From assembly GCF_001194135.2 (NCBI RefSeq), contig NC_068995.1, positions 7,952,957 to 8,016,956 on the forward strand: a stretch of DNA of 64,000 bases, written 5' to 3'. The position numbers were made by a program, and so were the translations under genes. Each line of letters opens with the position of its first letter. Position 1 is the first letter of the stretch. The notes beneath the pieces were generated by a model. The model saw only the letters and a list, made by a program, of their open reading frames with translations. It did not search any database and was not told where the DNA came from. This DNA comes from Octopus bimaculoides. Its lineage: Eukaryota. Of the stretch, positions 28,707 to 29,149 are shown piece by piece.

Positions 28707-28801
28707 TGATTGGTCCATTAACCGACCAATCAACGTCTAGCTATGGCGGGGACAGGTTTTCTCGAATATTCTAGAATTTTACTGCTGGTCTCTTATAAAA
28801 A
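28707..28801 (+). promoter_or_regulatory. Heat-shock-type promoter module: inverted CCAAT pair, GC box, 4-unit HSE, TATA
   Basis: TGATTGGTC (28707-28715) and GACCAATCA (28724-28732) are exact inverted copies. GGCGGGGAC at 28745-28753. tTTCtcGAAtaTTCtaGAAt at 28758-28777 is four perfect alternating nGAAn units. TATAAAAA at 28794-28801. The motifs are seen directly; function is inferred. Confidence 0.6.
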
Positions 28802-29149
28802 CCATTCGGTACGTGTTTTTGCGAGTAAGCCGAACCAAGAAGGCAGCTAATATAGCGAGAGAGAGAGAGAGAGAGAGGGAGGAGGGAGAGAGATGGCATG
28901 AGAGATAAATGTGATGCAGATCGATGACATAAACTTCGATTTCCACAAATACAACTCAAATGTTTCCAGTTATGCTGGGAAAGCTGCATATATCTTCATC
29001 CATCATCTCGACCAGTCACTTCTACAGACCAACCCACGATCATAAGACTAACACACGTATTCGCTGTTAGAATTTAGAGTTAAATATTTACAGGTCAATT
29101 AACTCCTTAATATTATCAATGACGGTCTAGTTATCAGTCTGCATTAAAT

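What the first reader, a model, noticed from the sequence alone, without database searches (positions are those of the whole stretch)
28707..29045. Orphan heat-shock-type promoter pointing antisense inside a collagen intron
Seen in sequence: within 95 bp of non-repetitive DNA are two exact inverted GACCAATCA (NF-Y-type) boxes, a GC box, a perfect four-unit HSE (TTCtcGAAtaTTCtaGAA, 28759-28776) and TATAAAAA about 17 bp further on. Established knowledge: HSF binds arrays of three or more alternating nGAAn units, and hsp70-class promoters place a proximal HSE a short distance upstream of TATA together with CCAAT and GC boxes. Downstream (predicted TSS ~28820-28830) there is no heat-shock protein ORF. 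There is only (GA)n, a 43-codon ORF (28914-29045, MQIDDINFDFHKYN...) and then the antisense strand of a Tigger relic. Inference: this could drive a stress-inducible antisense lncRNA or smORF that interferes with collagen transcription or splicing. It could also act as an HSF-bound intronic enhancer, or be a displaced or TE-borne promoter.
Basis: partly seen in the sequence, partly recalled or inferred. Interest (0 to 1): 0.72.

Follow-up and report, generated by a model that had tools for sequence, protein, structure and literature searches.

The report
Orphan heat-shock promoter in collagen intron
A complete, textbook heat-shock-gene promoter sits alone inside a collagen gene intron and points the wrong way with no heat-shock gene behind it; it most likely yields a short non-coding RNA under stress, but nobody has measured its activity.

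Summary
Within 95 bp (28707-28801) lie an inverted pair of GACCAATCA boxes, GGCGGGG, a perfect four-unit HSE (28759-28776), and TATAAAAA 17 bp further on.

This is not chance. A four-unit HSE is expected 0.004 times per window, and the whole cluster about 1e-6 times in an assumed 2.7-Gb genome.

The module lies in a roughly 500-bp GC/CpG-richer island (28555-29060). It sits in the 28-kb gap between two minus-strand collagen exons and points antisense.

No target was found:
- No HSP70, HSP90, DNAJ, sHSP, HSP60 or ubiquitin sequence anywhere in the 64 kb.
- No Pfam or Rfam family downstream.
- The 43-codon ORF follows three upstream ATGs and has no relatives.
- The predicted RNA shows no unusual folding.

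Beyond it lies a badly decayed pogo/Tigger-type remnant, only weakly supported.

No repeat signature was seen: single copy in the window, and no TIR, LTR or target-site duplication above chance. Genome-wide copy number and conservation could not be tested, because no orthologous or paralogous DNA could be retrieved.

Best reading: an orphan but structurally competent HSF/NF-Y/TATA promoter giving a short antisense non-coding transcript. A silent displaced or transposon-borne copy is the main rival. It is a new member of a known kind, of moderate interest.

The parts
28555..29060 (.). GC/CpG-richer island that contains the promoter
   Evidence: GC is 37-53% in 60-bp windows, against 20-30% in both flanks. 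There are 17 CpG in 28551-28850, at or above the 99th percentile (16) of 300-bp windows.
28707..28715 (-). CCAAT box (GACCAATCA on the minus strand), NF-Y type
   Evidence: Read. Exact match.
28724..28732 (+). CCAAT box GACCAATCA, NF-Y type; with the previous box it forms a 26-bp near-palindrome (28707-28732)
   Evidence: The self-match 28707-28732 is 84.6% over 26 bp.
28746..28752 (+). GC-box-like GGCGGGG (imperfect Sp/KLF-type site)
   Evidence: Read. GGCGGG/CCCGCC occurs only 4 times in the window.
28759..28776 (.). Perfect four-unit heat shock element TTCtcGAAtaTTCtaGAA (its own reverse complement), plus a 2/3 fifth unit TTA at 28779-28781
   Evidence: It is the only match in the window and appeared in 0 of 100 shuffles. 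Expected 0.004 per window.
28794..28801 (+). TATA box TATAAAAA, 17 bp after the HSE
   Evidence: Read.
28820..28830 (+). Predicted transcription start, about 26-36 bp after the first T of TATA (inferred, not observed); no good Inr match here
   Evidence: Inferred from TATA spacing. The sequence gcgAgtaag was read.
28857..28894 (+). (GA)n / purine tract in the predicted transcript
   Evidence: family D5. Microsatellites are very common throughout this window.
28914..29045 (+). 43-codon ORF; not supported as coding
   Evidence: It is the fourth ATG, after upstream ATGs at 28893, 28898 and 28909. No Pfam hit. No relatives.
29143..29148 (+). First poly(A)-signal-like hexamer (ATTAAA) downstream; others at 29282 (ATTAAA) and 29617 (AATAAA)
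29250..29800 (-). Heavily decayed pogo/Tigger-type transposase remnant, antisense to the promoter; a possible element end TA|CAGGTCAATT at 29089-29100 (unconfirmed)
   Evidence: Pfam DDE_1 at E 0.011, 15.8 bits, below the cut-off of 22. The motif PMVQEAISVLKAYYLRR resembles P-M-D-Q-G-V-I..K..YRR (my reading). No mate for the putative TIR was found. No N-terminal domains were detected.
38131..38202 (-). Collagen Gly-X-Y exon (72 nt), upstream neighbour in the host gene's direction
9767..9793 (-). Collagen Gly-X-Y exon (27 nt), downstream neighbour in the host gene's direction

Best explanation
This is a structurally complete heat-shock-class RNA polymerase II promoter with no protein-coding target.

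Proposed mechanism:
- NF-Y-type factors on the CCAAT pair, and an Sp/KLF-type factor on GGCGGGG, would keep the roughly 500-bp island accessible.
- On proteotoxic stress, HSF trimers would bind the four-unit HSE, centred about 57 bp upstream of the predicted start.
- TBP on TATAAAAA would fix initiation on the + strand near 28820-28830.
- The transcript would run through the (GA)n tract and the uATG-rich stretch into the antisense pogo/Tigger remnant.
- It would probably end at one of the poly(A) signals at 29143, 29282 or 29617, giving an unspliced non-coding RNA of about 0.3-0.8 kb, antisense to the collagen pre-mRNA.

I take that RNA to be a by-product of an orphaned promoter rather than a dedicated regulator.

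What is shown: the motif syntax, its non-random nature, the orientation, the intronic position, and the absence of any recognisable coding or known RNA target.

What is inferred: factor binding, inducibility, the start site, the transcript ends, and the lack of function.
For: - Exact motifs with hsp70-like order and spacing.
- The HSE is unique in the window, with 0 of 100 shuffles matching, and these are the only perfect trimeric HSEs.
- The joint chance expectation is about 1e-6 per assumed 2.7-Gb genome.
- Local GC/CpG-rich island.
- All motif instances are free of mismatches, while the neighbouring transposase remnant is barely recognisable. The module is therefore either younger than its surroundings or under constraint (inference).
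- No HSP-type sequence in the 64 kb by tblastn.
- No Pfam family on the + strand from 28.3-64 kb or the minus strand from 17.7-28.7 kb, apart from a mariner HTH.
- No Rfam family apart from microsatellite noise.
- The smORF lies behind three upstream ATGs.
- The predicted RNA folds no better than shuffles, z = -1.2.
- HSF-driven non-coding transcription units are an established class (PMC9032817, PMC6765114).
Against: - There are no expression, chromatin or HSF-binding data of any kind.
- There is no good initiator match at the predicted start.
- Only one HSE array is present, whereas many hsp70 promoters have several.
- The CCAAT boxes are 17 bp apart. From memory of NF-Y work, that is too close for two NF-Y trimers to bind at once.
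- Conservation in related species could not be examined.
- The contig piece carrying it (28098-33893) is bounded by N gaps, so the genomic context rests on scaffolding.
Confidence: 0.45

Rival explanations
1. It is a displaced promoter fossil. It would be a copy of a heat-shock-type promoter carried by a transposon, an endogenous viral element or a segmental duplication. It now sits silenced in intronic chromatin and is neither bound nor transcribed.
For: - It lies between microsatellites and transposon remnants.
- At least one of the window's other GC-richer patches (46.8-47.3 kb) overlaps copies of an interspersed SINE-like family.
- It has no target gene.
- Mobile elements with HSE promoters are documented: Helitrons in Caenorhabditis (PMC6927752).
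- I found another in a metagenome. A multi-copy element has a CCAAT-HSE-TATA promoter about 60 nt ahead of a 1206-aa ORF.
Against: - It is single copy in the window and unrelated to the window's repeat families.
- There is no TIR, LTR termini or target-site duplication above chance. The best case is a 5-bp TAAGA match where about 1 is expected.
- No translated paralogues were found in the protein collections. This is a weak test, because it depends on ORFs having been called on such copies.
- It shares nothing with the metagenomic element beyond the HSE core.
- An old neutral fossil should have lost some of about 40 specified motif bases, and it has lost none.
Confidence: 0.3
2. It is the real promoter of a protein-coding heat-shock gene. 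Either the coding exons lie outside this window, beyond a very long first intron, or the 5.8-kb contig piece has been placed in the wrong scaffold position.
For: - The motif syntax is that of inducible chaperone genes.
- The piece 28098-33893 is flanked by N gaps of 411 and 132 bp.
Against: - The same ungapped piece holds 5 kb downstream of TATA and no coding sequence.
- The predicted leader has seven ATGs in its first 150 nt. Heat-shock mRNA leaders are typically short and free of upstream ATGs (background knowledge).
- A plus-strand gene reaching beyond the window would have to cross at least two collagen exons on the other strand.
Confidence: 0.1
3. It is a functional regulator of the host gene. 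It could drive a heat-induced antisense lncRNA that lowers collagen transcription or alters splicing by transcriptional interference. Alternatively it could be an HSF-bound intronic enhancer.
For: - The antisense, intronic position is correct.
- The motifs are intact, which fits constraint.
- HSF1-dependent non-coding RNAs with regulatory roles exist elsewhere (PMC9032817).
Against: - Nothing in the sequence links it to collagen regulation.
- The nearest collagen exons are 9.3 kb and 18.9 kb away.
- Poly(A) signals occur within 0.3-0.8 kb, so long-range interference is not expected.
- The RNA shows no structural signal.
Confidence: 0.1
4. It is a chance cluster of short motifs in AT-rich DNA.
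For: Each motif is short, and an assumed 2.7-Gb genome should hold about 200 chance four-unit HSEs.
Against: The joint expectation for the HSE plus a placed TATAAAA, two NF-Y-grade CCAAT boxes and a GC box is about 2e-11 per window and 1e-6 per genome. The motifs also sit in the canonical order inside a compositional island.
Confidence: 0.01

Closest known systems
hsp70-class heat-shock promoters (Drosophila hsp70, human HSPA1A, Xenopus hsp70; mollusc HSP70 promoters such as Argopecten, PMC4100766)
   Same: - An array of alternating nGAAn units just upstream of a TATA box.
- CCAAT and GC-type accessory boxes further upstream.
- Everything packed within about 120 bp of the start.
   Different: - No chaperone ORF follows anywhere in the window.
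- The leader is rich in upstream ATGs.
- It lies inside an intron of another gene, on the opposite strand.
- There is only one HSE array.
HSF1-driven non-coding transcription units (Drosophila hsr-omega, human satellite III, heat-induced ncRNAs in C. elegans; PMC9032817, PMC6765114)
   Same: A heat-shock-type control region with a non-coding product is the expected outcome here.
   Different: - Those cases have measured HSF binding and induction; here there is none.
- There are no tandem satellite repeats, and no sequence relationship.
Transposon-borne heat shock elements (Helitrons in Caenorhabditis, PMC6927752; ONSEN/copia-type LTRs from background knowledge; the metagenomic element L011 found here)
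   Same: - An HSE, or a whole heat-shock promoter, sits away from chaperone genes and among repeats.
- The metagenomic element shows the same CCAAT-HSE-TATA syntax.
   Different: - No repeat-family membership, termini or target-site duplication could be shown.
- There is no similarity to L011 beyond GAATATTCTAGAA.
Intronic natural antisense promoters
   Same: An independent TATA promoter inside an intron, facing against the host gene.
   Different: The known class is defined by observed transcripts; here the transcript is only predicted.

Membership tests
hsp70-class heat-shock promoter | At least three contiguous, alternating nGAAn units (HSE) | tested here: met
   There are four perfect units at 28759-28776. 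It is the only such site in the window, and 0 of 100 shuffles gave one.
hsp70-class heat-shock promoter | HSE proximal to a TATA box and start site (within about 100 bp) | tested here: met
   There are 17 bp between the HSE and TATAAAAA.
hsp70-class heat-shock promoter | CCAAT and GC accessory boxes upstream | tested here: met
   There are two GACCAATCA boxes. GGCGGGG is present, though it is an imperfect GC box.
hsp70-class heat-shock promoter | A chaperone or other stress-protein gene downstream | tested here: not met
   Tblastn with HSP70, HSP90, DNAJ, sHSP, HSP60 and ubiquitin probes found nothing in 64 kb. Pfam scans were negative.
hsp70-class heat-shock promoter | HSF binding and heat-inducible transcription | not testable with these tools
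   No expression or binding data were available.
Transposon-borne promoter (MITE, solo LTR, Helitron) | Multiple related copies | tested here: inconclusive
   It is single copy in the 64 kb, and no translated paralogues were found. The source genome itself could not be searched.
Transposon-borne promoter (MITE, solo LTR, Helitron) | Terminal repeats or defined termini with a target-site duplication | tested here: not met
   No inverted repeat brackets the island. The best TG..CA unit has a 5-bp duplication where about 1 is expected by chance. Flank k-mer matches are at the chance level.
Translated small ORF gene | First or well-placed AUG, with relatives elsewhere | tested here: not met
   Three upstream ATGs precede it. 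It has no exact or homologous sequences and no Pfam hit.
Known non-coding RNA family | Match to an Rfam model, or unusual structure | tested here: not met
   Only sub-threshold microsatellite hits were found. The fold z-score is -1.2.
pogo/Tigger transposon (the downstream relic) | DDE_1 transposase domain, CENP-B-type HTH, TIRs with a TA duplication | tested here: inconclusive
   DDE_1 scores E 0.011, below the curated cut-off. No HTH domains were found. The candidate end TA|CAGGTCAATT has no mate.

The most novel reading that the evidence does not exclude
A single-copy, conserved, HSF-triggered antisense transcription unit inside a collagen intron. Under heat stress it would throttle or re-route transcription of a large extracellular-matrix gene, directly coupling the proteotoxic stress response to the secretory load.
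Probability: 0.07. Interest if true: 0.7.

Novelty: new member of a known kind. Interest (0 to 1): 0.35.

Why it matters
If active, this would be a clean natural example of a heat-shock promoter without a chaperone gene. It would be useful for asking how orphan HSF targets arise and whether stress-induced antisense transcription touches host genes. It could also serve as a compact native inducible promoter for an organism group with few genetic tools. If it proves to be a repeat-borne or silent fossil, it is an ordinary by-product of genome turnover.

Tried and rejected
1. A hidden heat-shock gene. Pfam scans of concatenated ORF fragments were negative: + strand 28.3-49.3 kb, + strand 49-64 kb and minus strand 17.7-28.7 kb, and local ORFs.

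2. A known RNA. Rfam at E up to 1 over 27-34 kb gave only TG/TA-microsatellite 'miRNA' noise. The fold z-score was -1.2.

3. Orthologues or paralogues.
- Exact look-ups of 20 window ORFs found none.
- A collagen-exon query found Logan contigs of a related species. The intron flanks are 85-88% identical, but the contigs are only 1-2 kb and sit 25 kb from the promoter.
- Two homology searches with all ORF translations of 28.25-30.2 kb found nothing.
- A full HMMER scan of 1.84 billion representatives with the peptide that spans the promoter found nothing.

4. Pattern scans.
- The strict architecture gave 0 hits in metagenomes.
- The looser architecture gave 9 loci, none related to this one.
- Viral contigs gave 0.

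5. Transposon signatures. I checked inverted repeats, TG..CA units with a duplication, flank k-mers, a Tigger TIR mate, and N-terminal Tigger domains. All were at the chance level or negative.

6. A Helitron-like end. The CCAAT palindrome followed by CTAG was considered and rejected: the next base is C rather than T, and the hairpin is not GC-rich.

7. Identifying the Logan runs through the literature gave no paper. The organism was therefore not confirmed by any tool.

Full report
**What is there**

- TGATTGGTC at 28707-28715
- GACCAATCA at 28724-28732
- GGCGGGG at 28746-28752
- TTCtcGAAtaTTCtaGAA at 28759-28776
- TATAAAAA at 28794-28801, 17 bp after the HSE
- a (GA)n/purine tract at 28857-28894
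- a 43-codon ORF at 28914-29045

With a start about 30 bp after TATA, the elements sit near -30 (TATA), -57 (HSE centre), -75 (GC-like) and -95/-112 (CCAAT). That is the layout of inducible hsp70-type promoters (background knowledge).

Two refinements apply:
- GGCGGGG is an imperfect GC box.
- The CCAAT boxes are arms of a 26-bp near-palindrome only 17 bp apart.

**Is it more than chance?**

- The four-unit HSE is unique in the window and absent from 100 shuffles.
- The only perfect three-unit HSEs in the window are the ones nested in it.
- The only two GACCAATCA sites are this pair.
- A first-order Markov model built from the window predicts 0.004 four-unit HSEs per window and about 200 in an assumed 2.7-Gb genome.
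- Requiring a TATAAAAA 10-25 bp away, two NF-Y-grade CCAAT boxes and a GC box brings the expectation to about 1e-6 genome-wide.
- So this is an evolved promoter module, or a copy of one.
- It lies in a roughly 500-bp island (28555-29060) with GC of 37-53% against 20-30% in the flanks. Its CpG density is at or above the window's 99th percentile.
- The window as a whole is not CpG-depleted (o/e 0.88), so the CpG signal is modest.

**Context**

- AG/GT-flanked Gly-X-Y exons of 81, 72 and 27 nt lie on the minus strand at 54253-54333, 38131-38202 and 9767-9793.
- The module therefore sits in the 28-kb interval between two collagen exons and faces the other way.
- That interval contains eight N gaps, so small exons could be hidden.
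- The piece carrying the promoter (28098-33893) is itself bounded by N gaps.
- Downstream on the minus strand, about 29250-29800 is a badly decayed pogo/Tigger-type transposase remnant.
  - A frame-stitched translation gives Pfam DDE_1 at E 0.011, below the curated cut-off.
  - It contains a recognisable P-M-x-Q-x-x-I..K..Y.RR motif (my reading).
  - No HTH domains and no TIR mate could be found.

**Does it drive anything recognisable?**

No.
- Pfam scans of all non-trivial ORF fragments found only a faint mariner HTH. They covered the + strand from 28.3 kb to the window end and the minus strand from 28.7 back to 17.7 kb.
- Tblastn with HSP70, HSP90, DNAJ, small-HSP, HSP60 and ubiquitin probes found nothing in the 64 kb.
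- Rfam gave only microsatellite-type sub-threshold hits.
- The 43-codon ORF is the fourth ATG after upstream ATGs at 28893, 28898 and 28909.
- It is one of 30 ORFs of at least 30 aa in 1.9 kb.
- It has no exact or homologous counterpart.
- The predicted RNA (28824-29165) folds no better than shuffles, z = -1.2.
- Poly(A)-signal hexamers follow at 29143, 29282 and 29617.
- Only moderate splice-donor-like sites occur downstream; the best scores 8 of 9 consensus positions.

**Is it a repeat?**

Within the window it is single copy. It does not belong to the SINE-like family that occurs at least eight times in the window.
- No inverted repeats bracket the island.
- The best TG..CA unit with a duplication (TAAGA, 28624-29042) is what chance predicts.
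- Flank k-mer matches are at the chance level.

I could not search the source genome. The indirect route through called ORFs gave the following:
- A related species is present in Logan assemblies. L001-L003 carry the orthologous 81-nt collagen exon, and the intron flanks are 85-88% identical.
- Two searches with every ORF translation of 28.25-30.2 kb found nothing.
- A full scan of 1.84 billion representatives with the promoter-spanning peptide also found nothing.
- This argues weakly against a very abundant family. It says nothing about moderate copy number or about conservation.

**Mechanism and rivals**

*Best-supported reading (0.45).* An orphan but structurally competent HSF/NF-Y/TATA promoter initiates near 28820-28830 on stress. 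It makes a short, unspliced, non-coding plus-strand RNA that ends within 0.3-0.8 kb and is probably without dedicated function. The contrast between about 40 specified motif bases with no mismatch and the nearly unrecognisable transposase remnant next door means the module is either young or constrained (inference).

*Main rival (0.30).* It is a silent fossil of a promoter brought in by a mobile element or a duplication. Precedents exist:
- Helitron-borne HSEs in Caenorhabditis (PMC6927752).
- A multi-copy metagenomic element I came across, with a CCAAT-HSE-TATA promoter ahead of a 1206-aa ORF. It shares nothing with this locus beyond the HSE core.

*Lesser rivals.*
- A real chaperone gene separated by mis-scaffolding or a very long intron (0.10).
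- Chance (0.01 or less).

**Comparison and verdict**

The module works like an hsp70-class promoter and meets the motif-level criteria. It fails the 'chaperone gene downstream' criterion, and inducibility is untestable here.

It is best filed with orphan HSF targets and HSF-driven non-coding units (PMC9032817, PMC6765114). It is a new member of a known kind. Interest is moderate at 0.35: the sequence signal is unusually clean, but nothing yet shows activity, conservation or effect.

Noticed in passing
L011 55-3737 (also L005, L009, L012; metagenome sample Ga0209782): A multi-copy element has an HSE-rich CCAAT-HSE-TATA promoter (CCAATGAGTCAACAGAATATTCTAGAACGTTCTAGAAGCTCTCCCATACCTATAAAA, with further HSE arrays upstream). 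It lies about 60 nt before a 1206-aa ORF. The ORF has a weak Pfam Endonuclease_7 hit and, by my reading, protein-primed DNA-polymerase-B-like motifs. It looks like a mobile or virus-like element with a heat-shock-type promoter.
   Followed up: partly
window 2257-3035, 11941-12111, 23956-24340, 46881-47344, 49598-49906: An interspersed SINE-like repeat family occurs at least 8 times in the window, at 70-85% identity. It accounts for several of the GC-richer patches.
   Followed up: partly
window 18403-18831 (-) and 44547-45070 (+): There are two Tc1/mariner-type transposase remnants. The first gives a weak Pfam HTH_48 hit; the second was recognised only by eye (…PNIWPPNYPDNNPLDYYV…). The first also holds three near-perfect trimeric HSE matches at 18451-18716.
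   Followed up: partly
window, whole: Trimeric HSE matches with up to one mismatch are about three times more frequent than in shuffles: 30 observed against 10.5 expected, and 0 of 100 shuffles reach 30. The cause is unknown, possibly k-mer bias from repeats.
   Followed up: no
L001 430-1591 versus window 54130-54137: The related-species contig carries a 1.16-kb insertion, with a 194-aa called ORF, next to the 81-nt collagen exon. The insertion is absent from the window.
   Followed up: no
window 58411-58485 (-): A single tRNA-Thr(CGT) prediction. It could be a real tRNA gene or the head of a tRNA-derived SINE.
   Followed up: no
window 59782-60750: This stretch has the highest CpG density in the window (20 CpG per 300 bp at 60351-60650). 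It lies next to a 203-aa low-complexity T/P/L-rich ORF at 59782-60393 (+). Its nature is unknown.
   Followed up: no
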